DNA from: Octopus sinensis
Taxonomy: Eukaryota
Direction: 5' to 3'
Assembly (NCBI RefSeq): GCF_006345805.1
Contig: NW_021833232.1
Location: forward strand, 1-64,000
DNA: 64,000 bases
Both the position numbers and the translations under genes were made by a program. The notes below the pieces were generated by a model, which searched no databases, was not told where the DNA came from, and saw only the letters and a program-made list of their open reading frames with translations. This document shows positions 856 to 29,745 of the stretch, piece by piece; the first letter of the stretch is position 1, and every line of letters starts with the position of its first letter.

Positions 856-923
856 AAAATCACCGTGAAGAACTAGAAGCTATCACAGGGCTGCAACTGT
901 CTACAGCTGGCATTGGAAATGAA
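856..923 (+). CDS. PTPRN: IA-2/PTPRN-like internal exon, end of the IA-2 ectodomain: (E)NHREELEAITGLQLSTAGIGNE
   Basis: Acceptor ttttcag|AA at 855/856 and donor GAA|gtaagt at 923/924. The peptide resembles the LEExxGLxIxxxGVG motif at the end of the IA-2 ectodomain. Ends in phase 0 and joins exon 13006 in frame. Confidence 0.8.
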
Positions 924-957
924 GTAAGTACTACTTATATATATATATATATATATA

Positions 958-1158
958 CGGCGAGCTGGCAGAAACGTTAGCACGCCGGGCAAAATACATT
1001 GCCATATTTTGTCTGCCATTACGTTCTGAGTTCTAATTCTGCCGAGGTCGACTTTGCCTTTCATCCTTTCGGGGTCGATAAATTAAGTACCAGTTACGCA
1101 CTAGGGTCAATATAATCGACTTAATCCATTTGTCTGTCCTTGTTTGTCCCCTTTGTGT
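958..1158 (+). mobile_element. tRNA-derived SINE family C (Nin-domain-like)
   Basis: Contains TGGCAGAAACGTT and GAGTTCTAATTC boxes and GCCTTTCATCCTTTCGGGGTCGATAAATTAAGTACC. A reverse copy is at 26643-26864; degenerate copies are at 1245-1335, 6830-6965, 20965-21155, 23620-23830 and 24050-24180. Confidence 0.75.
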
Positions 1159-1574
1159 AAAAGAGTAAAGAGTATATGGCTGTGATGCATGTGCCTGGTG
1201 TATACTTATTAGATGGGTAATCATGCATTGCTCTTTCACTCAATAAAGTCAACCTTGGTGGAATTCAAACTCAGAATATAAAAGCAGATGAAATGCTGCC
1301 AAGCATTTTACCTGGTGTGGTAACAATTCAACCAGTAATTCTTCCTGCTATAGGCACAAGTCCTGAAATTTTGGCAGTGGGGATTAATTGACACAAGACA
1401 TTAAAATTAAAAATGGTAATTTAGACATCGTTAAAAATTTGATTATAGCAGTTTTATATATGATTGGGAAGTAAGCTTCTGACCACCGGACTTTAAACTG
1501 CAGGTGGTTGTGGGTCTTTGATTCAGGAATTTCAGGGTTTTGAGAGAAACAGAAGCATGTCTTCACTATTATTC

Positions 1575-1992
1575 TTCATCATCATTGTTCGACCGTGGTC
1601 GAGACAATGGAATTTACCATGCTACACCAGACTTCACGGTCCATCATAGCATTATGGAGGTCCTGTTGCTGGATAGCTGTATCCCTGGAAATTACATCAG
1701 GGTAGGAGAGTGTGCGCCCTCTGGTATCGCGAGTAGATGGCTTCCAGAGGAGAAGTGTAGAAATTACCTCATTTTCAGCTCTAATACAATGTCCAGCAAA
1801 CTGGACTCTCCTACCTTTCACAAAAGATGACACAGGTGGTAGTTTCCCATATATTTGCATTTTGGGTGGATGATGCTTCCACGAGAGATTTTGAACTCTC
1901 ATAAGGAGGCGAGTGTAGGGTCCATCCAACCGCCTCTCAAGCTTCTTTGATAATGTCCAGGTTTCTGAGCCATATAGTAGAATTGGTTCGAC

Positions 1993-1994
<2 letters not shown>
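1575..1994 (-). mobile_element. RTE-clade LINE 3' fragment, copy 1
   Basis: Translates VEPILLYGSETWTL...FAGHCIR...DREVW, an RT thumb/C-terminal region, and ends in a (ATG)n tail. Confidence 0.85.
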
Positions 1995-2026
<32 letters not shown>

Positions 2027-2027
2027 C

Positions 2028-2456
2028 GATCATCATCATTGTTCAACCGTGGTCGTGACAACGGAATTTACTATGTTACGCCAGACTTCATGGTCCATCA
2101 TAGCATTACAGAGGTCCTGTTGCTGGAGATTACATCAGGGTAGGAGAGTGTGCACCCTCTGGTGTTGCAAGTAGATGGCTTCCAGAGGAGAAGAGTAGAA
2201 ATTGCCTCGTTTTCAGCTCTACAACGATGTCCAGCAAACTGGACTCTCCTACTTTTCACAAGAGATGACACAGGTGGTAGTTTCCCTTATATTTGCATTC
2301 TGGTTGGATGACGCTTCCATGAGAGATTTTGAGCTCTCATAAGGAGGCGAGTGTAGGTTCCATCCAACCGCCTCTCAAGCTTCTTTGATAACGTCCAGGT
2401 TTCTGAGCCATATAGTAGAATTGGTTCGACTGTGGCTTTGAAGATTTTGAAGATTT
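2028..2456 (-). mobile_element. RTE-clade LINE 3' fragment, copy 2
   Basis: Same family as 1575-1994 with small deletions; reads KIFKATVEPILLYGSETWTL and has a (ATG)n tail. Confidence 0.85.
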
Positions 2457-2553
2457 TTTTGTCTCGACCGCGGTTGAACAATGATGATGATTCTTAGGTC
2501 TTCTCAGGCTTGGAATAGTAGCAATTGTCAGGGTCCCAGCCATGGGGTAACTA

Positions 2554-2944
2554 CATCACCATCATCATCATCATCGTTTAACGTCCGCTTTCCATGCTAG
2601 CATGGGTTGGACGGTTCAACTGGGGTCTGGGAAGCCCGAAGGCTGCACCAGGCTCTAGTCTGATCTGGCAGTGTTTCTACAGCTGGATGCCCTTCCTAAT
2701 GCCAATCACTCCGTGAGTGTAGTGGGTGCTTTTTATGTGCCACCGATACAGGTGCCTGACGAGGGTGGCAAACGGCCATGCTCGGATGGTGCTTTTTATG
2801 TGCCACTGGCACGGAGGCCAGGCAAGGCTGGCAACGGCCACGATCGGATGGTGTTTGTTACGTGCAACCAGCACGGAGGCCAGTCAATGTGGTGCTGGCT
2901 ACGGCCACGTTCGGATGGTTCTCATATGCCACCGGCACTGGTAC
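2554..2944 (-). mobile_element. Family B non-autonomous retroelement with an RTE-type (GAT)n tail and an internal ~60-bp minisatellite
   Basis: The 3' end reads ...gcatggaaagcggacgttaaacgatgatgatg. The 5' region contains tandem ggatggtgcttttta.gtgccac units. Confidence 0.8.
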
Positions 2945-3399
2945 CACAACTACAAATTCCATTGATGTTGATCGATTTCGATTTTGATTTAATTTTTGAT
3001 TTTTGGTGATAATAAGCTGTCTGAGTGCAGAGATGCAGAAATACTCTTGGCTGGTGTTAGGGTGCACAGTAAATACACTGGGTGTGAGGGATCCCCTGGT
3101 CTTGCCACAAGACCCCTAGCTCTTGTCACAAAACCCCTAAATTTTGTCACTGAACTCTTAGCCCTAGTCTTTCTAGATGAGGGACACTCTGATGTAAAAC
3201 CTGCAACTTCACATGATTACTGGTCATTCCACTCTGGCCTGTCCCTCAGTACTAATTACAGACTCTCAGTGAATGGTACTTGTGTTGTACAAGCATTTAT
3301 CACTATAATCCAGTTGTTCCCAACCTTTTCACAGTGGTTCCCAAGCCTTTTATTCAAATGAGTTTCTCCATGGACCCCTTTTAATATGCTTATCCTTAT

Positions 3400-3630
3400 G
3401 TATTTATCTATATGTATGAAATTCACTTTGTGTGTGTGTATGTGTGTGTCTATGCATGGCCAAACTGCTGGATCAATCTGTACCAAATTTGGTATGAAGG
3501 TTTTTCATTACTTGGGGAAGGTTCTAGTGGAGTTAAATTTTGGCCCTTGCCTATATGGGGGTGGGGCTGTAGACCCCCCCCCCCATCTCATATATGACCC
3601 TTCTGATTTTTTTGTCAACAGATTCCTATT
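3400..3630 (+). mobile_element. Possible Helitron-like non-autonomous 5' segment
   Basis: tctatatgtatgaaat, then (TG)n, then aaactgctggatcaatctgtaccaaatttggtatg. This matches the architecture I recall for animal non-autonomous Helitrons; not verified by search. Confidence 0.35.
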
Positions 3631-4168
3631 GGTAATTTCAACCAATCAATGAATGACATGTATTCAGCAGAATAAAATTACTGCTGTTGTTTGTCGACAA
3701 GAACTTCCAGCAGTGTATATTTCATTTGTCGTTGTTATTTATGACAACCCTAACCCTAAAACCCTAACCCTAACCCTAAAACCTTAACCCTAACCCTAAC
3801 TCTAAAACCTTAACCCTAAAACCCTATCCTAACCCTAAACCCTAACGCTAACCCTAAAACCTTAAAACCAGTACAAACGCATGAACAATATCATAAATAA
3901 CAGTTACAGACGAAATATACACCATCGATAGCTGTTGTTGACAAACAACAGCAGTAATTTTATTCAGCTGAATACATCTCATTGATTGATTGAAATTACT
4001 GAAACACGAGAAATTTAACGTGAAATGACTTCGTAAATATAAGTTTTTCTCAAAAATGCTAAGAGTAAAAGATGTTTCATATGAGACATTCTATCAGTGT
4101 CCGAAGTTTGAAAGTGTTGAGTTACAAAAAATTATTTTTTAAATCTGCCGGTCAAAAGGTAAAGATCC
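3631..4168. mobile_element. Long-TIR non-autonomous element carrying telomere-like (CCCTAA)n at 3746-3868
   Basis: 3631-3700 is inverted at 3938-3998. The full right end extends to ...aaagatcc at 4168, and a solo inverted copy of that end is at 11369-11585. Confidence 0.65.
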
Positions 4169-4423
4169 ACTAGCCCTACCTGTAACACTAAACCATAAAT
4201 TTGTTTACAGCAGGGCCTGCGCTAAGCCACTGCAACCCTTGCAGTCATAGGAGGCCGCACGAAGAACTGGAATTACTATAATGTAAAACTTAAAATCCGA
4301 TGTTACACACAACGTATATAATTTTCAGAAGAAAACAAAACAATAAGGTCTCTAAATAATGAAAGGTCTTCATACCGATGGACACTTGGACTTTTAGGCA
4401 ATATACACTGTAGGATTACTCTT

Positions 4424-4838
4424 ACTCTCTTTTACTTGTTTCAGTCATTTGACTGCAGCCATGCTGGAGCACCACCTTTAATCGAGCAACTCGACCCCGG
4501 GGCTTATTCTTTGTAAGCCTAGTACTTATTCTATCGGGCTCTTTTGCTGAACCGCTAAGTAACGGGGACATAAACACACCAGCATCGGTTGTCAAGCAAT
4601 GCTAGGGGTACAAACACAGACACACAAACACACACGCATATATATATATATATATATACATATATACATATATACGACAGGCTTCTTTCAGTTTCCGTCT
4701 ACCAAATCAACTCACAAGGCATTGGTCGGCCCGGGGCTATAGCAGAAGACACTTGCCCAAGATGCCACGCAGTAGGACTGAACCCGAAACCATGTGGTTG
4801 GTTAGCAAGCTACTTACCACACAGCCACTCCTGCGCCT
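4424..4838 (-). mobile_element. tRNA-derived SINE family A (CORE-like motif, internal TA/TG microsatellite, AAAGAGT tail)
   Basis: Head AGGCGCAGGAGTGGCTGTGTGGTAAG...GGTTCAGTCC; contains GGCATCTTGGGCAAGTGTCTT. More than ten copies occur in the window. Confidence 0.85.
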
Positions 4839-5134
4839 ATTTAGAAGTTCTACAAAATTAAACTGTGATTGATTTCAGGATTTGTTTTAATAACTTTGTT
4901 TATACTCACATCATCTGAGAGAATTTTTCTGAAAAAATATTTTTTATCAAAATAAATATATCTATTTCTTTTAACATTCTTTAAACTTCTGAGCAATGCT
5001 GGCTACTTAGATTAGTATATATATATATATATATATATTATATTTTTGTGAAATTTTATTTAGTATTTCTAAATTGAATTTTTCCCTGTAAGTTTGGAAT
5101 AATATTCCCTCATATTATTATTATTATTATTATT

Positions 5135-5530
5135 GAGTGGCTGTGTGGTAAGTAGCTTGTTTACCAACCACATGGCTCCGGGTTCAGTCCCACTGCGTGG
5201 CACCTTGGGCAAGTGTCTTCTACTATAGCCTCGGGCTGACCAAAGCCTTGTGAGTGGATTTGGTAGACAGAAACTGAAAGAAGCCCGTCGTATATATGTA
5301 TATATAGATGTATGTGTGTGTGTGTCTGTGTGTCTGTGTTTGCCCCCCCAACATCGCTTGACAACCGATGCTGGTGTGTTTACATCCCGTAACTTAGTGG
5401 TTTGGCAAAAGAGACCAATAGAATAAGTACTAGGCTTACAAGCAATAAATCCTGGGGTCGATTCGTTTGACTAAAGGCGGTGCTCCAGTATGGCTACGGT
5501 CAAATGACTGAAACAAGTAAAAGAGTAAAG
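5135..5530 (+). mobile_element. SINE family A, head-to-head with 4424-4838
   Basis: Near full-length copy in the opposite orientation. Confidence 0.85.
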
Positions 5531-5959
5531 ATATATATATATATATATATATATATCTATATATTATATATATATAATTTAGATCACGGATCCTCAGTAC
5601 TACCTTTGTAGACCACCAGAGGTCTGGGGACGCCATGTTGGGAACTACCACTATAATCCAATGATGTACAAATGTCTCTTTATGGCAACCTCATTTTTCA
5701 TTCCATCTACTGAAAGTCCTTTGGCAAGGGAAGAGTGGTGACCTGTGCAGACCATTTGAAAAAACACAGTGAATTATAATTCTTGTCTGTCAACTGTGCT
5801 TTAAACCATGCAGATCTGCAACGAGACTGAATAGTCAACTGATAGGTCATGGATGGAAGGTCAGAAAAGCCATTGACAGCAAGGAAGCGCAAGAACAAGG
5901 CAATCTTCTATACAGATGGCTCAATCACCATCTATGTGTGTATATTCATGTACATGTGA

Positions 5960-6500
5960 ATGCATTTATATATGTACATATGTATATATGTATTTATGTA
6001 TGTATATATGTATGTATGCATATATGTACATATATATGAATGTATGTGCATATGTATGTATGTATATATATATATGTATATATGTATGTATTTATGTAGG
6101 TATATGTATGTATGTATTTATGTATGTATGTATGCATATATGTACATATGTATGAATGTATGTCTGTGCATATATATGAATGTATGTGCATATGTATGTA
6201 TATATATATATATGTATATATGTATGTATGTATTTATGTAGGTATATATGTATGTATGTATGTATTTATGTATGTATATATGTATGTATGCATATATATA
6301 CATATGTATGAACGTATGTCTGTGCATATATATGAATGTATGTGCATATGTATGTATATATACATATATGTATATATGTATGTATGTAAGTATGTATGTA
6401 TTTATGTATGTATATATGTATGTATGCATATATGTACATATGTATGAATGTATGTCTGTGCATATATATGAATGTATGTGTATATGTATGTATGTATGTT
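5960..6500 (+). repeat. Compound TATG minisatellite, about four units of ~130-140 bp
   Basis: Recurring tatgtacatatgtatgaatgtatgtctgtgcatatatatgaatg. Confidence 0.8.
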
Positions 6501-6515
6501 ATATATATATATATA

Positions 6516-6571
<56 letters not shown>

Positions 6572-7978
6572 TATATATGTATTAATGTGAGTATATATGT
6601 GTATATAAATTTAAGGTTTCATTATCAGCACCAGACTACAAATTAATATTTGAACAAAGCATGATGTGTATATATGCGTATGCACATACACGCCTTTGTC
6701 TGCATGTGCACGCACATATATAATCATTTAAATGTACAAAAATAATTTTAAAAAACATAAAAAAACATTAAAAAAACCGCTTGTTTTGTTTTTTGTTTGT
6801 TTGTCGTTTTCAATTATTTATTTATTTACTTGTATTAATTTTCTGAACCCTGGAGGAATAACTTAAAAATTAAATGCTGCGTAGGTTTGAACTCATTAGA
6901 ACCAAGAGCAATAGAACAAGAAAACTTTACGTCATTCTTCCAATGAACGCTCTGCCATCTTGGCCCACGTCTGTCCACCTGCCACGCCTCCTTCACCATC
7001 TTCTTCATCATTTAACAATTCTGATGAATCATGGATTTTTTTTTTATTTCTAAAATACCTTCATTTGTGTTTTTTTTATTTATCGTCTTTTTTTTGGTTT
7101 TTTCTTTCATTTCTTTTTTGTTTTTGTTTTTCATCTCCAAATTCGAAGAACTTTAATCGAAGACCCTCCGCCGAACCATCAGTGATTTGGTCCCCACCAC
7201 ACTGTCAAAACCACCACCCACCACCCCACCACCACCACCACTACCACCCCACCACCACCACACCACCCACCACCACCACCACCATCACCCACCACACACC
7301 ACCACACCACCACCACCACCAGCACCACCACCACCACCACCACCATCACACCACCACCAATCACCACCACCACCACCAAACCCACCACCACCACCACAAC
7401 CACCACTACCACCGCCACCACCCACCACCACCGCCACCAACATCACCACCACCACCACCAACCACCACCACCACCACCACCACCATCCCCACCACCACCA
7501 CCACCACCACCACAACTACCAAAAACCACCCCACCACTGCCATCACCACCTCCACTACTACAACCACCAGCACCAGCACCACTACCATCACACCCACCAC
7601 AAACACCACCAACACAACAACCACTACTAATTAATACAACTGCCACAACAATCACCACCACTTCAACCACCACTACTCGTACCAACCTCTCCCTACCACT
7701 TCCCCATCCTTAAACAACAGTTTTGAATTTGTGTGAAACTTACACCACCTCTTCTCCTCCTCTCCCCACTACCCTCAACCCCTTAAAAAAAAAAACTTTG
7801 GTTCCTGGGAATGGAGTTAGGGAATGCTCTACATATTCTTGGAGAGTACCATTCAGCCAGGGAAGATTCCCTTAAGTGTGATCTAAGAGAGAAATGTGTT
7901 GACTATCTCCCTATCTGTCCGTCAGTCTATCTGTCTGTCTGTCTGATTTCTCTCTCTCTCTCACTTCATATAAATATA

Positions 7979-8020
<42 letters not shown>

Positions 8021-8252
8021 TATATATATGTATATATATATAATATATATATATATACATGTATATATATATATATATTATATATATATATATATATATA
8101 TCTAATATCATATATATTATATATACTTTAGATGGATGGATAGATAAGTAGAGAAAAGAGAGACAGACAGAGACTGAGACAGATAGCTAGGTTGACAGAC
8201 AGACAGATTGATCGATACATAGATTGATAGACAGACAGACAGACAGACAGAC

Positions 8253-8317
<65 letters not shown>

Positions 8318-8330
8318 AACATACAGATAA

Positions 8331-8363
<33 letters not shown>

Positions 8364-9248
8364 TAGATAGATAAGCAGATTTATGTACAGATGGGTAGAT
8401 AGACGGACAGATAAATAGACAGACAGATATATGGATAGATAGGTTCATAGACAGAGAGGGCTAAGTAGATAGACAAATAGTTAGATAGATAGACTGCAAG
8501 AAAAAAAATGAAAGATAGACTGAACAGAACAGAGGTGGAAAGTGAGGAAACAAACAAAAAAAATAAGAAAAAAAAAACAGTGCAACAAATAAAAAGAACC
8601 AAATAATAAAAAAACACTAAACAGCATAAGTAAAAAAACAATATTAAAACAGTTAAAAAAAAAACTTATCCGGGATTGACGAATCAGGTTCATTCGCTTG
8701 TAATTAAAAGCCAATGTTGATTGCATCTTCATCTGCAGATAATCAGACCCTTTGGCATTTGCAGACTTACAGAACACTTGGTTCCATGGACTTCATTTTG
8801 CTAAAGAGAAGTTCGTTAATAACGTACGCTACATGTACGTACATGCACACACAGATATATACACACACACTCATAGACACATGTAGGCACATGTACACAC
8901 GTAGACACACACACACACACATATAATCATATTGGATATGCATATATACTTTCAATTTAAATACATGCATTATATTTTTTATATATAGGTGTATATATAT
9001 TTTCAAGTATATATGTGTGCACACATGCAACACACGTGCATACATGCACACACACACATCTACAGATATATATGTGTGTGAGTGTGTACACACACTCAAG
9101 TGAGCACATAAATGCAAATCAAGGTGGAAAAATAGTACTCGAATACCAAAGGTAGAGTAATATGCTTTTATTAAAGCTGCGAAATCTTCATAAAACTGTA
9201 AAGATTTTGCAGCTTTGATAAGAGTATGTGTGTGTGTGTTTGTGTATG

Positions 9249-9280
<32 letters not shown>

Positions 9281-9299
9281 CATATATACATATACATAT

Positions 9300-9345
<46 letters not shown>

Positions 9346-9348
9346 GTT

Positions 9349-9645
9349 GAGGCGCAATGGCCTAGTTGGTTAGGGCAGCGGACTCGCGGTCATAGGATTG
9401 CGGTTTTGATTCCCAGACCAGGCGTTGTGAGTGTTTATTGAGCGAAAACACCTAAAAGCTCCACGAGGCTCCGGCAGGGGGTGGTGATCCCTGCTGTACT
9501 CTTTCACCACTCTTTCTCCCACTCTTTTTTCTGTTGGCCTGCTCACTTAGCCAGCGGGGTGGCCTCATTTGAAGGCTAAAACAATGCGAACGCATTGTGA
9601 CCAGCGATGTGTAACTATATCTGATGGACTGGTCGGTCACGTGAT
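9349..9645 (+). mobile_element. tRNA-Arg(TCG)-like SINE, tail type 1
   Basis: GAGGCGCAATGGCCTAGTTGGTTAGGGCAGCGGACTCGCGG... carries A and B boxes and a CTCGCGG anticodon loop. Confidence 0.8.
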
Positions 9646-10410
9646 GGTGATATATAATATATATAATATATATATATGATATATTATATAAAATATAATA
9701 TATATAATATATATATATAATATATATAATATATATAATATATATATTTAATATATATATAATATATATATATAATATATATATATATCATATATATAAT
9801 ATATATATTATATATAATTACACGCACACATACAGATGTATGTATACAAACACACACATATATATGTAAACACACACGCATACACATATATATATGTACG
9901 CACACATACATACACACACGTATACAGAGACAGATAGACAGAAAGAAAGCAGAAAAGCAGACAGACAGACACACACATGATATGCTATATTAAAGACAAC
10001 TACATCTGTGTACTTGCATAACCCTTTTCCTTAAAGTCCTTATATTCCATTATATCAATCCTTTAGGTATAGCTTGGATTAGTAGTCCTTCTGAATCCAT
10101 TAATCCATTAGTATTTTGAAACCATGACTTCCTCGTCATCAGAATGAAATGATGGTAGTATCGTTGTGTCAGATGCATTGTAAGGGTGTTTTTATTTTAC
10201 TCCTGTTTGAAAGTGCAAAGCTACCAGGCAAACAGTTGACAGGGAAATGTCAGCACTTGTTGCTGCATGGTAAGGAGTTTGCTTCTAAACCATATGGTTC
10301 TTGGTTCAGTTTCACTGTATAGCACCTTGGGCAAATACCTTCTACTATGGCTCCAGGCTGACCAAGCCAAGTCTTGTGAGTGGATTTGGTACTCTGAAGC
10401 TAAAAGAAGC

Positions 10411-10465
<55 letters not shown>

Positions 10466-10906
10466 GGGGAAACAGCTGTAATTTATGAGATGTGTCATTT
10501 GCTTCTATAGAATATTTAAATTGAATTGGATATACATTGTTCAATTTATTGTTTTGTTTTGTTTTTTTTTCCATTTCTGATTTATATATATATAATATAT
10601 ATATTATATATATATATATACTATACATATATATACACACACATATATATGTGTGTGTGTGTGTGTATGTATAGTATATGTATATGTATATGTATATATA
10701 TATATATAGATATATATATATATATTATATATAAATGCTTCTAACCTTACAGCAGTTAGGAACAACCATATCTTAGTCAGTCAGTAGAAGGACTTCACTA
10801 CCTCATATGTTCTTAAAATTTAAATCCACACCTTTGTCTGTATATCTACCTTCTCTATAATGTTGCCACTAGATTTGAAAATTTTTGTATTAATGGAAGA
10901 CCTCTA

Positions 10907-10999
10907 TAATTGGCTGATGAGTACTCAGCATCTTAAATCTGTTGTAATACATACAACATTTAATAAAATGATGTAGTACGAAACGATCGTACCAAATTA
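10907..10999 (+). ncRNA. Type I hammerhead ribozyme, canonical core
   Basis: TAATTGG-CTGATGA-GTACT...AGTAC-GAAA-CGATCG-T-A-CCAAATTA. Stem I is TTGG/CCAA extended by AAT/ATT. Stem II is GTACT/AGTAC extended by CATC/GATG, TTAAA/TTTAA and TGTTGTA/TACAACA. Stem III is the palindrome ACGATCGT. Predicted GUA cleavage after 10991. Confidence 0.85.
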
Positions 11000-11233
11000 C
11001 CGGAGTCATTCTTGTTGCTTATTTTGATATATATATATATATATATACAATCGTTATTGTAATTTGGTACAATATATATATATATAGCAAATTAAAAGGG
11101 TGACTATTAGCAATTAGAACCTAAATGCAAAATTAATAGAGGTAACAAAAATGATGGAGGATACTCATAAGTGGTGCTATTCAGTACTCTCCATCACTTT
11201 TGCTCTCTCTCTCTTGCTCTCTCTCTCTCTCTG

Positions 11234-11271
<38 letters not shown>

Positions 11272-11368
11272 GGCAAATTGAAAATTAGAAATGACAAAAC
11301 AACAAAATTCAAAAGGACACACACAACAAATGTATTACCTTGACACTCAATATAAGATAAGAAAAAAA

Positions 11369-11585
11369 GGATCTTTTCAATCTCAGTCAGCTTTTTTTAA
11401 TTAATTTTTTTAAAGTAAAGTTTGAAACTTTGGATACTGGTTGAATGTATCATGTAGAACATGGTTTACTCTTAACATTTTTGACAGAATTTTGTATTTT
11501 AGAAGTTATTTCATGTTAAAGTTGTTGTATTTGGGTAATTTTAACCAATCAACGATGTGTATTCAGCTGAAGAAGCTTACTGCTC
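11369..11585 (+). mobile_element. Solo terminal repeat of the 3631-4168 element family
   Basis: ggatctttt...aaactttggatactg...gtaattttaaccaatcaa..gtattcagctga aligns with the reverse complement of 3950-4168. Confidence 0.6.
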
Positions 11586-11736
11586 TTTGCGAAAGTAATG
11601 GATGAGTAATGGAAGAGTATGAATGTATATATTAAACATGTATACATATATCTATCTATCTATCTATCTATCAATCTATCTATCCATCTATCTATCTATC
11701 TATCTGTCTATCTATCTACCTACCTATCTATCTATC

Positions 11737-11769
<33 letters not shown>

Positions 11770-12179
11770 GTGTGTATGTGTGTGTCTTAAGCATGTGTAC
11801 ATATATATGTATACATACACATGTATACATATATATATATATCTATATATCTATACACACTCACACACACATGTATGTATGTATGTATGTATTTTCTATT
11901 TTTTAATTATTACATTTCTTCTAGTGAGGAGGGAGCCGATTTCCAACAAAGATACAGGGCTCCGTCATTGGGATGTAGTTAACACAGACAAATTCACATT
12001 TCAAACTTGAGAAAATCTTGCATATTTTTACTATTCCACTCACAAATTGTACTCGTATGAATCAGCCGGTCGATTTCTCTTTCTGAAAATCCTTGTTTAT
12101 CCAGATTTTCCTTTAAGCATTTACTAACAAAACTTAGTGCCCTAGTTATTATTGGTATGAATATAAATTCATAGTCTGG

Positions 12180-12210
<31 letters not shown>

Positions 12211-13005
12211 TGTATGTATGTATGTATGTATGTATGCAAGTATGTATGTATGCATACATGCAAGTATGTATGTATGTATGCATGCATGTATGTATGTATT
12301 TATGTATGTATGTATGTATGCATGCATGCATGCATGCATGCATGCATGTATGTATGTATGTATTTATGTATGTATGTATGTATGTATGCATGCATGCATG
12401 CATGTATGTATGTATGTAAGTATGTATGTATGTATGTATGTATGTGTGTATGTATGTATGTATGTATGTATGTATGCATGCAAGTATGTATGTATGTATG
12501 CATACATGCAAGTATGTATGTATGTATGTATGTACGTAAGTATGTATGTAAGTATGCATGCATGTAAGTATGTATGTATGTATGTATGTATGTATGCATG
12601 TATGTATGTATGTATGTAAGTATGTATGTATGTATGCATGCATGCAAGTATGTATGTATGTATGTATGTATGTACGTATATTTGTTTGTATGTATATGTA
12701 TGTATGTATGTGTGTGTGCATCTTTGACTTTGACAACTGGTGTTGGTTTATTTACATCCCCATAGCTAAGCAGTTGGCACAAAAAAACTTATAGACTAAG
12801 TGCATAAGTAGCAGGCATGACAAAGTAAGTTCTGGAGGCAATTTGTTTGACAAAACCATTCATGATGGTGCCACGATGCGACTGCCATCCACTAACTAAA
12901 ACAAACAAAAGATTAAAGATTGGATACAAAAAAAATGCAGATTTTTAAATTAAGAAAAAAAAGTTGGGATTTTTAAGCATTTTGTTGTTTTTCTTTTTCT
13001 TTTAG

Positions 13006-13194
13006 GTTAAAGTCGTACAGACAACAGGGAAATCCCCGAAATACTACACTTTGACCTTTGTCCTATGTGGAATCATTGCCACAGCCATCCTCGCTGTGGT
13101 GGCCTTCTACATGTTCCGGCAACATCACCAGTCGAGGCAGAAACTTGCCCAACTCAGCAATCCTGACACCGCTGAAGCTTCTAAAGACTATCAG
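13006..13194 (+). CDS. PTPRN: IA-2/PTPRN-like transmembrane exon: VKVVQTTGKSPKYYTLTFVLCGIIATAILAVVAFYMFRQHHQSRQKLAQLSNPDTAEASKDYQ
   Basis: Pyrimidine tract plus tttag|GTT acceptor and CAG|gtaagt donor; 189 nt, phase 0-0. A hydrophobic helix is followed by a basic stop-transfer segment and SKDYQ, as in the IA-2 family juxtamembrane (DYQ[D/E]LCR) motif. Confidence 0.9.
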
Positions 13195-13382
13195 GTAAGT
13201 TGACATCTTGATTTATACATCTAAGTACAGGTGTAGCTCTCTGGTAAGAAGCTTGCTTCCCAACCACATGGTTCCAGGTTCAGTCCCACTGCATGGCACC
13301 TTGGCCAAGTGTCTTCTACAATAGCCCCGGGTTGACCAAATCTTTGTGAGTGGATTTGGTAGATGGAAACTGAAAGAAGTTC

Positions 13383-13474
<92 letters not shown>

Positions 13475-13481
13475 AATCTGT

Positions 13482-13865
13482 GGAGGCGCAATGGCCCAGT
13501 GGTTAGGCAGCGGACTCGCGGTCATAGGATTGCGGCTTCGATTCCCAGACCGGGCGTTGTTGAGTGTTTATTGAGCGAAAACACCTAAAGCTCCACGAGG
13601 CTCCGGCAGGGGATGGTGGTGATCCCTGCTGTACTCTTTCACCACAACTTTCTCTCACTCTTACTTCCTGTTTCTGTTGTACCTGTATTTCAAAGAGCCG
13701 GCCTTGTCACTCTCTGTGTCACGCTGTATATCCCCGAGAACTACGTTAAGGGTACACGTGTCTGTGGAGTGCTCAGCCACTTACACGTTAATTTCATGAG
13801 CAGGCTGTTCCGTTGATTCGGATCAACCGGAACCCTCGTCGTCATAACCGACGGAGTGCTTCCAA
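13482..13865 (+). mobile_element. tRNA-Arg-like SINE, tail type 2
   Basis: Same head and body as 9349. The flanking duplication (TA)nAATCT is at 13457-13479 and 13866-13888. A reverse remnant of this tail is at ~63050-63220. Confidence 0.85.
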
Positions 13866-16152: not shown

Positions 16153-16346
16153 CATTTCAAGATTTTAAATTTGGGAGCCCTCAAAAAATTGAACATACCT
16201 ATCCGATTCAAGTAGTATCAGACAAACTATATCCAATGACCAGCACCAACGAATTCAAAACATACGAATGAGGTCTCGTACTCCCCTTCACCCATCCACG
16301 TGTGTCGTCGAGTAAAAAAAATTCTACAGATAAATCTGTAGTTTAT

Positions 16347-16517
16347 AGGCACAGAGTGGCTGTGTGGTAAGTAGCTTGCTAACCAACCACATGGTTCCGG
16401 GTTCAGTCTCACTGCATGGCATCTTGGGCAAATGTCTTCTGCTATAGCCCCGGGCCGACCAATGGCTTGTGAGTGGATTTGGTAGACGGAAACTGAAAGA
16501 AGCCTGTCGTATATATG

Positions 16518-16548
<31 letters not shown>

Positions 16549-16750
16549 TTGTGTGTCTGTGTTTGTCCCCCTAGCATTGCTTGACAGCCGATGCTGGTGT
16601 GTTTACGTCCCTGTCACTTAGCAGTTCGGCAAAAGAGACCGATAGAATAAATACTGGGCTTACAAAGAATAAATCCCGGGGTCGATTTGCTTGACTAAAG
16701 GCGGTGCTCCAGCATGGCCACAGTCAAATGACTGAAACAAGTAAAAGAGT
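16347..16750 (+). mobile_element. SINE family A, full-length, flanked by a ~152-bp direct repeat
   Basis: 16195-16346 is repeated at 16751-16901 and abuts both SINE ends. Confidence 0.9.
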
Positions 16751-17589
16751 ATACCTATCCAATTCAAGTAGTATAGACAAACTATATCCAATGACCAGCA
16801 CCAACGAATTCAAAACATACGAATGAGGTCTCGTACTCCCCTTCACCCATCCATGTGTGTCATCGAGTAAAAAAAATTCTACAGAAAAAACTGTAGTTTA
16901 TTATCAGGGGGAGAATTCATCATCATCATCGTCGTCATTTAACGTCTGCTTTCCATGCTAGCATGGGTTGGACGGTTCAACTGGGGTCTAGGAAGCCAGA
17001 AGGCTACACCAGGCTCCAGTCTGATCTGGCAGTGTTTCTACAGCTGGATGCCCTTCCTAACGCCAACCACTCCTTGAGTGTAGTGAGTGCTTTTTATGTG
17101 CTAAACGAGGCTGGCAACGGCCACAATTGGATGGTGCTTTTATCAATAATAATAAAGGGGAAAATTAATTAATTAATTAATAATTAATAATTCCACCAAG
17201 TAGTATTCAGCATGTTAAAAGGACCATTTTCAGTAAACTTAAACAATATTTTTTATAATTAGGAGTATAATTATAATTAGGGTTCAGCAAAAACAATTTG
17301 CTTCACCACATACTGAACTTTAGAAATAGCAGCCAAAGAACCTATACGCCAAGGAAACCGGCCCTTATGAGCCAGGCATAGCTCGAGTAGGAACAAACAA
17401 TTATGTAGTTAGGACTATAAAACGTTATCTCAGTGGCTGTTATTATTTTAATCTCATTTTGCTCATGATGGGAGACAACTCTAGACATATTTCAGTCTGA
17501 TGCAATTTCGTCAATGAAGTTTGGCTTTCTCTGGAATTATTAGATTAGATTAGTAATAAGATAATCTCTAGATTAAGGCAAAATGATAA

Positions 17590-17940
17590 TGTTCGTCTTT
17601 CGGTTCGAAGATGACCAACTGACATCATCTGATGGAACTGGCGCCATGAGACCGGAGGTGGCTGGTGAGGCCAATCCGGGCAAGGAAGCCCCTCCCACAG
17701 GTGGGGCAGAAGTGGGTAGGGGCCGTGCTACTGGTGCAGGCGGCTCTGTCTTTACGCATCTGACGTTTCTGCTCCGCTGACCGAATCCGTCCCTCCTCGG
17801 CTGTCCCTGCTCCCACGGTGATTGCGCTGCGCCAGGATGAGCGGTTGGCAGCAAGTGTCTCCCAGGTCTCTGTTCCGATGGAGAAGTCTTTGAGAGAGAC
17901 CTTGAGACTATCCTTGTAGCGCTTCTTCTGCCCTCCGACT
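17590..17940 (-). mobile_element. RTE/BovB-like LINE 3' fragment with C2H2 zinc finger
   Basis: Translates GQKKRYKDSLKVSLKDF...WETLAANRSSWR...CPTCGRGFLARIGLTSHLRSH. The 3' UTR ends ggtcatcttcgaaccgaaagacgaaca. Confidence 0.85.
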
Positions 17941-18527
17941 TGCAAAATAATAGACTTGTGTATGTATAAATAAAAGATACATACATATGTATTGATGTAT
18001 ATGTATAGACATGTGTGTATATATACATGTATATATACAAATCACATGGACCAGTTTCATTGGTCAGCCTGAAGTTATAGAGGAAAACATTTGCCCAGGG
18101 TGCCATGCAGTGGGACTGAACCCAGGACCATGAGGTTGGGAAGTAAGCTTTTTACCACGCAGCCATACCTGTATATAATATATATGTATCTATGTATATT
18201 TTTGTATCTTTCTCTCTTTCTCTTTCAATCAAACACACATGCACACATACACTCACACACACCATCACATGCATAGACACATTCACTCACACACAGACTC
18301 ATACACATACACACACACAAATACACACATTTTAATTGCACACATTGCCAATCCATGCCAGCATGGGAAATAGACATTAGATGATGATGATGATTATCTC
18401 ACACACACACACACACACACACACTCCCTAACTTACCATATATATATATGTATGTATGTATGTATGTATGCATGTATGTATGTATGTATTTATGTATGTA
18501 TGTATGTATTTATGTATGTATGCATGT

Positions 18528-19458: not shown

Positions 19459-19589
19459 GATCTCTGCAGACAGAAGATGCAGAGCAAATCTTCTGAGAAG
19501 CCGGAACCTCTCCACGCTGCCACTCGTATTGCCAGTGTTTCTGAGGCGCAGGTGCGTAGTCCTTCCAGTAGAAGCAGTACATCTTCATG
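19459..19589 (+). CDS. PTPRN: IA-2/PTPRN-like cytoplasmic exon: DLCRQKMQSKSSEKPEPLHAATRIASVSEAQVRSPSSRSSTSS(W)
   Basis: Acceptor caccag|GAT and donor TG|gtaagt; 131 nt, phase 0-2. Continues DYQ|DLCRQ and ends in SPSSRSSTSSW, matching the conserved IA-2/phogrin segment that precedes EEP..NMDISTGH. Confidence 0.9.
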
Positions 19590-28911: not shown

Positions 28912-29745
28912 CATTTTACTTGTTTTAGTTATTAGACTGCAGCCATGCTGGAGCACTGCTTTGAAGAAAAAGTCTGGTACTTATTGTGTCAGGCTCTTTT
29001 GCCAAACTGCTAAGTTACAGGAACATAAACACACCAACACTGGTTATCAAGTGGTGATGCAGGACAAACAGTCACAGAGGCACATGCATACATCTATACT
29101 CTGTTACTTGGTTCAGTCATTTGACTGTGGCCATGCTGGAGCACCACCTTTAGTCGAGGAAATCGACATCGGGGCTTATTCTTTGTAAGCCTAATACTTA
29201 TTCTATCAGTCTCTTTTGCTGAACCGTTAAGTTACGGGGACAGAAACATACCAGCATCGGTTGTCAAGTGATGTTGGGGGGACAAACACACACACACACA
29301 TACATATATATATATACATATACATATATACGACGGGCTTCTTTAAGGCGTAGGAGTGGCTGTGTGGTAAGTAGCTTGTTTATGAACCACATGGTTCTGG
29401 GTTCAGTCCCACTGCATGGCACGTTGGGCAAGTGTCTTCTACTATAGCCTCGGGTTGACCGAAGCCTTGTGAGTGGATTTGGTAGACGGAAACTGATAGA
29501 AGCCTGTCGTATATATGTATATATATATATATATATATGTGTGTGTTTGTGTGTCTGTGTTTGTCCCCCTAGCATTGCTTGACAACCGATGCTGATGTGT
29601 TTACGTCCCCGTCACTTAGCGGTTCGGCAAAAGCGACCGATAGAATAAGTACTAGGCTTACAAAGAATAAGTCCTGGGGTTGATTTGCTCGACTAAAGGC
29701 AGTGCTCCGGCATGGCCACAGTCAAATGACTGAAACAAGTAAAAT
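28912..29745. mobile_element. Cluster of three SINE A copies: two partial on -, one full-length on + at ~29345-29745
   Basis: Junction tacgacgggcttcttt|aaggcgtaggagtggctg at ~29345. Confidence 0.8.

What the first reader, a model, noticed from the sequence alone, without database searches (positions are those of the whole stretch)
10907..10999. Intact hammerhead on the sense strand of the IA-2 intron between the ectodomain and transmembrane exons
Seen: a complete canonical core (CUGAUGA, GAAA, GUA), a G-C closed stem II extended into a long irregular hairpin, and stem III ACGATCGT. It is transcribed as part of the pre-mRNA, about 2 kb upstream of the transmembrane exon. Inference: cleavage after 10991 would cut the nascent transcript between the ectodomain and membrane-anchor exons. 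That could limit expression or compete with splicing. Dimer dependence may keep it silent or make it concentration-dependent.
Basis: partly seen in the sequence, partly recalled or inferred. Interest (0 to 1): 0.82.

Follow-up and report, generated by a model that had tools for sequence, protein, structure and literature searches.

The report
Transposon-borne hammerhead in IA-2 intron
The hammerhead ribozyme motif is real and does lie on the sense strand of an IA-2 intron, but it is the standard tail of a very abundant Penelope-like retrotransposon that landed there recently, so it is an ordinary passenger and not a device of the gene.

Summary
Window 10907-10999 (+) carries a complete type I hammerhead: CUGAUGA, a long helix II closed by a G-C pair, GAAA, the palindromic helix III ACGAUCGU, and GUA with the cut after 10991. 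It lies in the 12,082-nt intron between the last IA-2 ectodomain exon (856-923) and the transmembrane exon (13006-13195), on the sense strand.

The interpretation misses the main point. The motif sits inside a 293-nt, 5'-truncated 3' fragment (10736-11028) of a Penelope-like retrotransposon (PLE) of the Hydra clade, inserted into a (TA)n microsatellite.
- The genome holds at least 154 copies with the same hammerhead halves and 3,468 copies fitting the lineage's descriptor.
- In longer copies the motif lies 0.6-1.6 kb downstream of an ORF ending in a GIY-YIG endonuclease; in complete relatives that ORF also encodes a reverse transcriptase.
- Its helices covary across subfamilies.

The ribozyme is therefore selected for the transposon, not for IA-2. 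The window copy is 3.6% from the family consensus and has no partner copy within the 85-kb contig. Its helix III is unstable as a monomer. Published PLE hammerheads of this type are inactive as monomers.

The most likely state is a silent passenger. Regulation of IA-2 is unsupported but not excluded.

The parts
10736..11028 (+). 5'-truncated 3'-terminal fragment (about 293 nt) of a Hydra-clade Penelope-like element (PLE). It ends at the family's 'short' 3' end ...GCTTATTTTGAT.
   Evidence: 97.3% identical over 298 nt to the copy in L034 and 95.6% to the copy in L032. Other copies share this 3' end but start at variable 5' points. Ten differences from the consensus of 35 copies.
10907..10913 (+). 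Hammerhead helix I, 5' strand (UAAUUGG)
   Evidence: Pairs with 10992-10999. Positions 2.2/1.2 and 2.3/1.3 covary across subfamilies.
10914..10920 (+). Catalytic core C3-A9, CUGAUGA
   Evidence: Invariant in all 16 aligned copies.
10921..10979 (+). Helix II: a 59-nt imperfect hairpin closed by G10.1-C11.1. It contains a conserved AAUAAA at 10962-10967.
   Evidence: Fold. The proximal and apical stems covary. It accounts for the 51-nt insert relative to the Rfam model.
10980..10983 (+). GAAA (G12 A13 A14 A15.1)
   Evidence: Invariant in the alignment.
10983..10990 (+). Helix III, self-complementary ACGAUCGU. It gives 2 bp plus a GAUC loop in a monomer, or an 8-bp duplex in a dimer.
   Evidence: Energies. 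Position pair 84/87 of alignment A1 is G-C, A-U or G.U across subfamilies. Only 1 of the first 100 genome matches listed has the non-pairing A..C form.
10991..10992 (+). A17 and C1.1: the predicted scissile bond between 10991 and 10992 (triplet GUA)
   Evidence: Position inferred from the alignment to RF00163. Cleavage itself was not tested.
10992..10999 (+). Helix I, 3' strand (CCAAAUUA, with A10996 bulged)
10666..10735 (.). TA-rich microsatellite on the 5' side of the insertion (target sequence)
   Evidence: 25 of 33 distinct family copies are followed directly by (TA)n-rich sequence.
11029..11049 (.). (TA)n on the 3' side of the insertion
856..923 (+). IA-2 family exon encoding ..NHREELEAITGLQLSTAGIGNE, the end of the ectodomain
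   Evidence: Canonical tttcag| and |gtaagt boundaries. The resemblance to the end of the human IA-2 ectodomain is from memory. Pfam gave no hit on this short piece.
924..13005 (+). Host intron (12,082 nt, 35.6% G+C) that contains the PLE fragment
13006..13195 (+). IA-2 family transmembrane and juxtamembrane exon (..YTLTFVLCGIIATAILAVVAFYMFRQHHQSRQKL..KDYQ)
   Evidence: Splice sites. Homologs P0019, P0030, P0062 and P0068 match it between their Receptor_IA-2 and Y_phosphatase domains.
19459..19589 (+). Next exon (DLCRQKMQSKSSEKPEPL...SSW), in frame with the previous exon

Best explanation

How it got there (inferred from the anatomy of the copies). A 5'-truncated copy of the element's 3' untranslated tail was inserted by target-primed reverse transcription into a (TA)n microsatellite. 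That microsatellite happened to lie in the IA-2 intron, and the insertion went in the sense orientation.

What the ribozyme is for. In the transposon's own multimeric or paired transcripts, the motif is thought to act as a dimer. Two copies join through the self-complementary helix III and cut after GUA. Published work suggests this may need help from the element's own protein.

What it does in the IA-2 pre-mRNA (inferred, not measured). Here it is a lone monomer with a 2-bp helix III. Its catalytic fold is 4 kcal/mol less stable than the best alternative fold. It is most likely catalytically silent or nearly so, is removed with the intron, and has no function for the host.
For: It is a repeat:
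- 1,459 first-look candidates genome-wide; 41 of the 44 scored were full-length matches at 97-100% identity.
- 154 exact matches to both hammerhead halves.
- 3,468 matches to the lineage descriptor, against 0 for the reversed control.

The copies have PLE anatomy:
- Constant 3' end with variable 5' truncation points.
- Head-to-head inverted pairs.
- Two alternative 3' ends about 107 nt apart: 19 short and 14 long among 33 distinct copies.
- 25 of 33 copies abut (TA)n.

The coding part identifies the element:
- A GIY-YIG domain lies about 600 nt upstream of the hammerhead in L031 and L032.
- A related 922-aa ORF (P0002) has RT motifs FDLNNYYSSI, MGSSDSAE, YRDD and FLDI. It also has the Hydra-clade signatures RWK, DKT, CxCX5C, CxxC and CxH, as described in PMC8557442 section 11.
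- Its predicted fold matches telomerase TERT, group II intron, retron and LINE-1 reverse transcriptases.

The ribozyme belongs to the element:
- 14 of 24 diverged copies examined carry the same architecture 1.0-1.6 kb downstream of the endonuclease domain.
- On the 16-sequence alignment (these copies plus the window copy), 94% of cells are paired against at most 46% in the slid controls, and 7 pairs change on both sides.

The window copy looks neutral and is alone:
- 3.6% from the consensus, with a single hammerhead change, in the apical loop.
- No other copy in contig C9703.

Energetics:
- Catalytic monomer fold -16.3 kcal/mol against a minimum free energy of -20.3.
- Helix III hairpin +2.4 against the intermolecular duplex -10.0 kcal/mol.

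Literature:
- PLE hammerheads with a small palindromic helix III show no detectable cleavage as monomers and only weak cleavage as dimers (PMC4209133).
- The Anolis PLE hammerhead needs the element's protein, is dispensable for insertion, and leaves no RNA-seq ends at the cut site (PMC11167929).
Against: - No cleavage assay or RNA-end data exist for this sequence, so silence is inferred from energetics and from other PLE hammerheads.
- The hammerhead core and all three helices are intact in this copy.
- With thousands of near-identical copies, trans-dimerisation with other transcripts is physically possible.
- PLE proteins can assist cleavage (PMC11167929).
- The orthologous locus in related species could not be examined, so purifying selection on this particular copy cannot be ruled out.
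- The closest subfamily copies I opened lack an intact RT region, so the RT evidence comes from a relative whose endonuclease domain is 68% identical.
Confidence: 0.85

Rival explanations
1. Low-level, non-adaptive cleavage. The intronic copy occasionally dimerises in trans with transcripts of other PLE copies, or is helped by PLE protein. A small fraction of nascent IA-2 transcripts are then cut. The effect is a neutral or slightly harmful side effect of the insertion.
For: The motif is intact. The 8-bp intermolecular helix III is stable at -10.0 kcal/mol. Thousands of partner sequences exist in the genome. Protein-assisted cleavage has been shown for another PLE (PMC11167929).
Against: Dimeric PLE hammerheads cleave poorly even in vitro (PMC4209133). 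No RNA-seq ends were found at the cut site of the Anolis element. Trans-dimerisation on a nascent intron competes with splicing and with the more stable alternative fold. No expression data are available here.
Confidence: 0.1
2. Exapted regulator. The hammerhead has been recruited to cut IA-2 pre-mRNA between the ectodomain and membrane-anchor exons. This would limit expression or compete with splicing.
For: Sense orientation, intact core, and position between two functionally distinct exons.
Against: It is one of hundreds of essentially identical copies. The whole 293-nt fragment has diverged about 3.6% from the consensus. No cis partner is present. The monomer fold is disfavoured. No evidence of conservation is available. 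In Xenopus, about 43% of hammerhead-bearing retrozyme copies lie in introns, so intronic copies are commonplace (bioRxiv 10.64898/2026.07.22.740005).
Confidence: 0.04
3. A chance match to the hammerhead consensus in AT-rich intronic sequence.
For: The Rfam score is below the gathering threshold. Loose core patterns occur by chance in the window: 3 found against 0.5 expected.
Against: All core positions and all three helices are present. The same architecture with compensatory changes recurs across diverged PLE subfamilies. The reversed-pattern controls gave 0 matches.
Confidence: 0.01

Closest known systems
Hammerhead ribozymes of Penelope-like elements (Cervera & de la Pena 2014, PMC4209133; Lunse, Weinberg & Breaker 2017, cited in PMC6765202)
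   Same: Type I topology. Canonical core. A small self-complementary helix III that implies action as a dimer. A larger-than-usual helix II. Location in the non-coding terminal region of an element encoding RT and GIY-YIG. Frequent occurrence as nearby pairs on opposite strands.
   Different: Helix II here is far longer: 59 nt and about 21 bp, against 6-8 bp reported. Because of this the Rfam type I model scores it below threshold. Helix III is a full 8-nt palindrome rather than the 'minimal' form.
Hydra clade of C-terminal-endonuclease PLEs (Craig, Yushenova, Rodriguez & Arkhipova 2021, PMC8557442)
   Same: The RWK and DKT motifs, the CxCX5C linker, CxxC and CxH around the conserved E and N, a canonical hammerhead, insertion into (TA)n, and reported presence in Mollusca.
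   Different: The ORF is about 920 aa and the 3' region about 1 kb, so the element is longer than the '<3 kb' typical of the clade. The optional 3' extension is about 107 nt rather than 30-40 bp. Copy number in this genome is very high. No phylogeny was built here.
Ultraconserved intronic hammerheads of amniotes (HH9 and HH10; Rfam RF02275 and RF02277)
   Same: A type I hammerhead on the sense strand of an intron of a protein-coding gene.
   Different: Those are single-copy, conserved at orthologous positions, and active as monomers with a stable helix III. This one is a recent multi-copy transposon fragment with an unstable helix III. Neither Rfam family matched.
Non-LTR retrozymes and hammerhead satellites (newt satellite 2, Schistosoma Sm-alpha; PMC7229834; bioRxiv 10.64898/2026.07.22.740005)
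   Same: Type I hammerhead with a palindromic helix III, dimer-dependent, derived from or mobilised by PLEs.
   Different: Retrozymes are short tandem units that give circular RNAs. The window holds a single, non-tandem, 5'-truncated copy of an autonomous element's tail.

Membership tests
Hammerhead ribozyme, type I (Rfam RF00163) | Conserved core C3 U4 G5 A6 N7 G8 A9, G12 A13 A14, an A15.1-U16.1 pair, and H17 not G | tested here: met
   CUGAUGA at 10914-10920, GAA at 10980-10982, A10983-U10990, A10991.
Hammerhead ribozyme, type I (Rfam RF00163) | Helices I and II flank the core, with helix I open (type I) | tested here: met
   Fold, constrained fold, and covariation in both helices.
Hammerhead ribozyme, type I (Rfam RF00163) | Score at or above the family's gathering threshold (34 bits) | tested here: not met
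   19.6 bits, E = 0.011 in a 116-nt search. No hit in the wider scans. The cause is a 51-nt insert in loop II.
Hammerhead ribozyme, type I (Rfam RF00163) | Site-specific self-cleavage | not testable with these tools
   Needs an in vitro transcription and cleavage assay.
PLE-associated dimeric hammerheads | Short, self-complementary helix III that is unstable in a monomer | tested here: met
   ACGAUCGU: hairpin +2.4 kcal/mol against duplex -10.0 kcal/mol. The palindrome is kept as ACAAUUGU or ACGAUUGU in other subfamilies.
PLE-associated dimeric hammerheads | Located in the terminal non-coding region of an element encoding RT and GIY-YIG | tested here: met
   The hammerhead lies about 600 nt (closest subfamily) to 1.0-1.6 kb (others) downstream of the ORF that ends in GIY-YIG.
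Penelope-like elements, Hydra clade | [quoted passage not shown] | tested here: met
   Met at family level only. Pfam GIY-YIG hits. RT motifs in P0002. RVT_1 in 2 of 13 homologs. The predicted fold matches TERT and other RTs. The window copy itself holds no ORF.
Penelope-like elements, Hydra clade | RWK and DKT motifs, a CxCX5C linker, and CxxC and CxH around the conserved E and N | tested here: met
   In P0002: RWK at 30, DKT at 117, CNCRIKSKC at 794, CQLC at 885, CIH at 915. The same motifs appear in the consensus of 13 homologs. Criteria taken from PMC8557442.
Penelope-like elements, Hydra clade | [quoted passage not shown] | tested here: inconclusive
   Only one cysteine lies between VIY at 813 and YLG at 828 in P0002. 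No alignment with reference PLE endonucleases was made.
Penelope-like elements, Hydra clade | Insertion into (TA)n, 5' truncation, inverted 5'-truncated partner copies, and an optional 3' 'tail' | tested here: met
   The tail here is about 107 nt, longer than the 30-40 bp described.
Penelope-like elements, Hydra clade | Placement inside the Hydra clade in an RT phylogeny | not tested
Conserved intronic hammerheads (HH9 and HH10) | Single-copy and conserved at an orthologous intron position | tested here: not met
   At least 154 identical-motif copies. Orthologs could not be examined. No match to RF02275 or RF02277.
Non-LTR retrozymes | Tandem repeats of a short unit, each with a hammerhead | tested here: not met
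   One copy only in the 85-kb contig.

The most novel reading that the evidence does not exclude
Sense-strand intronic copies of this very abundant PLE hammerhead, including the one in IA-2, might be cut in vivo when PLE transcripts or PLE protein are plentiful, for example in neural tissue with active retroelements. Host pre-mRNA integrity would then depend on transposon activity. The element's unusually long, conserved helix II, with its invariant AAUAAA, might contribute to this.
Probability: 0.03. Interest if true: 0.6.

Novelty: new member of a known kind. Interest (0 to 1): 0.22.

Why it matters
As it stands, this is an annotation result. What looked like a gene-specific ribozyme is one copy of a transposon tail.

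It shows that hammerhead motifs in cephalopod introns should be checked against PLE repeats before any regulatory claim is made.

Two smaller points may interest ribozyme and transposon specialists:
- This Hydra-clade lineage carries a hammerhead with a 59-nt, covarying helix II. The Rfam type I model does not score it above threshold, so standard scans would under-count it.
- The lineage is very abundant in this 2.7-Gb genome: 3,468 copies fit the descriptor, and the endonuclease domain gave 18,865 first-look candidates.

If sense-strand intronic copies were shown to cleave, thousands of host introns would be affected. Nothing here suggests that they do.

Tried and rejected
- The Rfam gathering-threshold scan of the whole window found nothing. 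The E-value scan of 10600-11300 gave only microsatellite-driven miRNA false positives. The hammerhead model appeared only when the search was narrowed to 116 nt.
- I first read the sequence after ...TTATTTTGAT (ATCACCCCACGGATTTTT...) as the head of a tandem unit (pLTR junction). One search showed that this extension ends about 107 nt later, again at (TA)n, so I now read it as an alternative, longer 3' end ('tail').
- SINE origin: no tRNA-like part was found (ARAGORN, 0 genes), and longer copies continue into a coding region, so this was rejected.
- Pfam on the full-length ORF P0002 gave no significant family. PDB sequence searches with the protein and with a 13-sequence profile found nothing useful. 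The RT assignment therefore rests on motifs, on homologs with RVT_1 and on the fold search.
- Pfam on the short IA-2 exons and a whole-genome search with Receptor_IA-2 gave nothing for this contig. The gene identity was obtained instead from full-length homologs of the transmembrane exon.
- A cofold of two copies could not represent the catalytic dimer, because intermolecular helix III crosses helix I. Only the isolated helix III energies were compared.
- The first genome search with the low-complexity 320-aa protein failed. It was repeated with the C-terminal 149 aa.

Full report
THE OBSERVATION

The sequence at window 10907-10999 (+) contains every element of a type I hammerhead:
- Helix I: UAAUUGG (10907-10913) pairs with CCAAAUUA (10992-10999).
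- Core: CUGAUGA (10914-10920).
- Helix II: a 59-nt hairpin (10921-10979) closed by G-C.
- GAAA (10980-10983).
- Helix III: the self-complementary octamer ACGAUCGU (10983-10990).
- The triplet GUA, with the predicted cut between 10991 and 10992.

The minimum-free-energy fold reproduces helices I and II.

Rfam finds nothing at gathering thresholds in the window or in a 700-nt E-value scan. When only 10895-11010 is searched, Hammerhead_1 (RF00163) aligns end to end (model positions 1-45) with all core positions matching. The score is 19.6 bits against a gathering score of 34. The shortfall is due to a 51-nt insert in loop II.

THE GENE CONTEXT

On the + strand there are three exons:
- 856-923 (tttcag| ... 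|gtaagt) encodes ...ELEAITGLQLSTAGIGNE.
- 13006-13195 (ttttag| ... |gtaagt) encodes a transmembrane segment followed by RQHHQSRQKL...KDYQ.
- 19459-19589 continues in frame with DLCRQKMQSK....

A search of 1.84 billion representative proteins with the 13006-13200 translation returned full-length proteins of 938-987 aa. In these, the matched segment lies between a Receptor_IA-2 domain and a Y_phosphatase domain. The gene is therefore an IA-2 (PTPRN-family) homolog.

The intron runs from 924 to 13005 (12,082 nt). The hammerhead lies in it on the sense strand, 2,015 nt upstream of the transmembrane exon.

WHAT THE MOTIF BELONGS TO

A BLAST of 10880-11010 against the window's own 2.72-Gb genome gave 1,459 first-look candidates. 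Of the 44 that were scored, 41 were full-length matches at 97-100% identity and 3 were partial.

Comparing 29 other loci with the window showed the following:
- The repeat spans 10736 to about 11028 in the window.
- The 3' end is constant (...GCTTATTTTGAT).
- The 5' end varies from copy to copy.
- Several loci hold two copies head to head on opposite strands.

Among 33 distinct copies, 19 end at the short 3' end seen in the window and 14 run about 107 nt further. 25 of the 33 are followed directly by (TA)n-rich sequence. The window copy is flanked by TA-rich microsatellite on both sides.

In longer copies the sequence continues upstream into an ORF whose C-terminus is a GIY-YIG endonuclease, about 600 nt upstream of the hammerhead (L031, L032). 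The endonuclease domain alone gave 18,865 first-look candidates in the genome.

A relative with an open 922-aa frame (L047; P0002) has these features:
- Reverse-transcriptase motifs FIQFDLNNYYSSI, MGSSDSAE, YRDD and FLDI.
- A low-complexity linker.
- CNCRIKSKC (CxCX5C).
- A GIY-YIG domain.
- CQLC and CIH near the end.
- RWK and DKT motifs near the N-terminus.

Pfam's RVT_1 does not reach significance on P0002, but it does on 2 of 13 homologs. An AlphaFold model (pTM 0.65; the RT and endonuclease regions are confident) matches telomerase TERT, group II intron, retron and LINE-1 reverse transcriptases.

[quoted passage not shown] The combination of RWK, DKT, CxCX5C, CxxC and CxH, a canonical hammerhead, and insertion into (TA)n is what Craig et al. 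2021 list for their Hydra clade, which they also found in Mollusca (PMC8557442). The same paper describes frequent 5' truncation, adjacent inverted 5'-truncated copies and an optional 3' 'tail' as general PLE traits.

THE RIBOZYME IS A FEATURE OF THE ELEMENT

I scanned 24 diverged copies whose endonuclease domains are 60-78% identical to that of the window's subfamily. In 14 of them the same architecture lies 1.0-1.6 kb downstream of the endonuclease domain:
- CUGAUGA.
- A helix II of about 58 nt.
- GAAA.
- A self-complementary helix III (ACAAUUGU, ACGAUUGU or ACGAUCGU).
- GUA|C.
- A helix I that differs in sequence but still pairs.

On a 16-sequence alignment, 94% of cells form standard pairs, against 27-46% when the 3' partners are slid. 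Seven pairs change on both sides, against 1-4 in the slid controls. The covariation score is 0.213, against 0.03-0.10.

A lineage-wide descriptor matches 3,468 places in the genome, and the reversed control matches none. Many matches are close pairs on opposite strands. Among the first 100 listed, only one has the non-pairing A..C combination in helix III.

The exact halves of the window's own version occur 154 times, with a control count of 0.

STATE OF THE WINDOW COPY

- It differs from the consensus of 35 sampled copies at 10 of 281 compared positions (3.6%).
- The only change inside the hammerhead is 10951 A for T, in the apical loop of helix II.
- No other copy of the element or of any hammerhead of this type lies in the 64-kb window or in the remaining 21 kb of the contig.
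- The catalytically competent monomer fold is 4 kcal/mol less stable than the best fold (-16.3 against -20.3 kcal/mol).
- Helix III as a 2-bp hairpin costs +2.4 kcal/mol, while the 8-bp duplex between two copies gives -10.0 kcal/mol.

WHAT IS KNOWN ABOUT SUCH RIBOZYMES

- Cervera and de la Pena (PMC4209133) found hammerheads with a small palindromic helix III and an enlarged helix II in the terminal repeats of metazoan PLEs. Single motifs showed no detectable cleavage, and dimeric constructs cleaved weakly.
- A review (PMC6765202) summarises the same view and cites Lunse, Weinberg and Breaker for cleavage as dimers.
- For an Anolis PLE, the hammerhead cleaved only when the element's protein was present. 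It was not needed for insertion in vitro, and no RNA-seq reads ended at the cut site (PMC11167929).
- In Xenopus, about 43% of PLE-derived retrozyme copies lie in introns (bioRxiv 10.64898/2026.07.22.740005). Intronic hammerhead-bearing repeats are therefore commonplace.
- PLEs are annotated as a recently active order in Octopus vulgaris (PMC13282606). I found no paper in the library that describes hammerheads of octopus PLEs.

CONCLUSION

Shown:
- The motif is real.
- Its intronic, sense-strand position is real.
- It is the tail of a Hydra-clade PLE.
- The ribozyme's structure is conserved for the element.

Inferred:
- The copy arrived by target-primed reverse transcription into a (TA)n tract.
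- It is evolving neutrally.
- As a lone monomer it does not cut IA-2 pre-mRNA to any meaningful extent.

I put it at about 4%, with a further 10% or so for occasional non-adaptive cleavage.

The finding is a new member of a known kind. Its only unusual traits are the very long helix II, the longer 3' tail and the copy number.

Noticed in passing
window 11059-11070: GTAATTTGGTAC is the exact reverse complement of 10989-11000, the region around the hammerhead cut site plus the helix I 3' strand. It sits 30 nt beyond the element's 3' end, between two (TA)n runs. Among the 30 loci, only the window has such an isolated fragment. L027 has a full tail-to-tail inverted copy instead. It may be a by-product of insertion, such as template switching. 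It could also pair with the hammerhead's helix I 3' strand in the pre-mRNA.
   Followed up: partly
window 10962-10967; columns 59-64 of alignment A1: An AAUAAA hexamer in the 3' strand of helix II is invariant or nearly so in all 16 diverged copies. It ends 24 nt upstream of the hammerhead cut site. It might be the element's polyadenylation signal or part of a tertiary contact. In the sense orientation it could in principle promote intronic polyadenylation, although the intron has 6 other AATAAA hexamers.
   Followed up: partly
L019 (G000:C21:32064756-32065032): At the junction between two head-to-head 5'-truncated copies there are about 3.5 units of CCCTAA, the reverse complement of the telomeric repeat. 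This recalls the telomeric repeats attached to endonuclease-deficient PLEs.
   Followed up: no
L002-L030: The family has two alternative 3' ends about 107 nt apart, and both abut (TA)n. This resembles the PLE 'tail' that has been explained by two reverse-transcription start sites, but it is three times longer than the 30-40 bp described.
   Followed up: partly
L031:8652-9614(-), L043:1477-2961(-): In the subfamily closest to the window copy, the region between the RT remnant and the endonuclease is swollen by asparagine-rich low-complexity sequence and by microsatellite-like repeats (IYLS repeats). The copies I opened had no intact RT upstream, so this subfamily may be non-autonomous.
   Followed up: no
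window 4574-4858, 5072-5470, 10224-10400, 13216-13500, 16230-16613, 29267-29611: A different short interspersed repeat recurs in both orientations through the IA-2 introns. Its translations share ...LLTTQPL... and ...PRCHAVGLNPEPCGW.... It is often next to (TA)n or (TATG)n runs. ARAGORN finds no tRNA-like part in the window.
   Followed up: no
window 1585-2067(-), 2290-2493(-) and 17576-18151(-): ORF fragments that look like the C-terminal parts of LINE proteins (ILLYGSETWTLSKKLERRLDG......CPTCGRGFLARIGLTSHLRSH). Pfam gave no hit.
   Followed up: partly
P0015: The best-scoring match to the IA-2 transmembrane exon is a 6,093-aa predicted protein with 8 matched stretches at 28% identity. It is probably a mis-predicted or repetitive gene model.
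   Followed up: no
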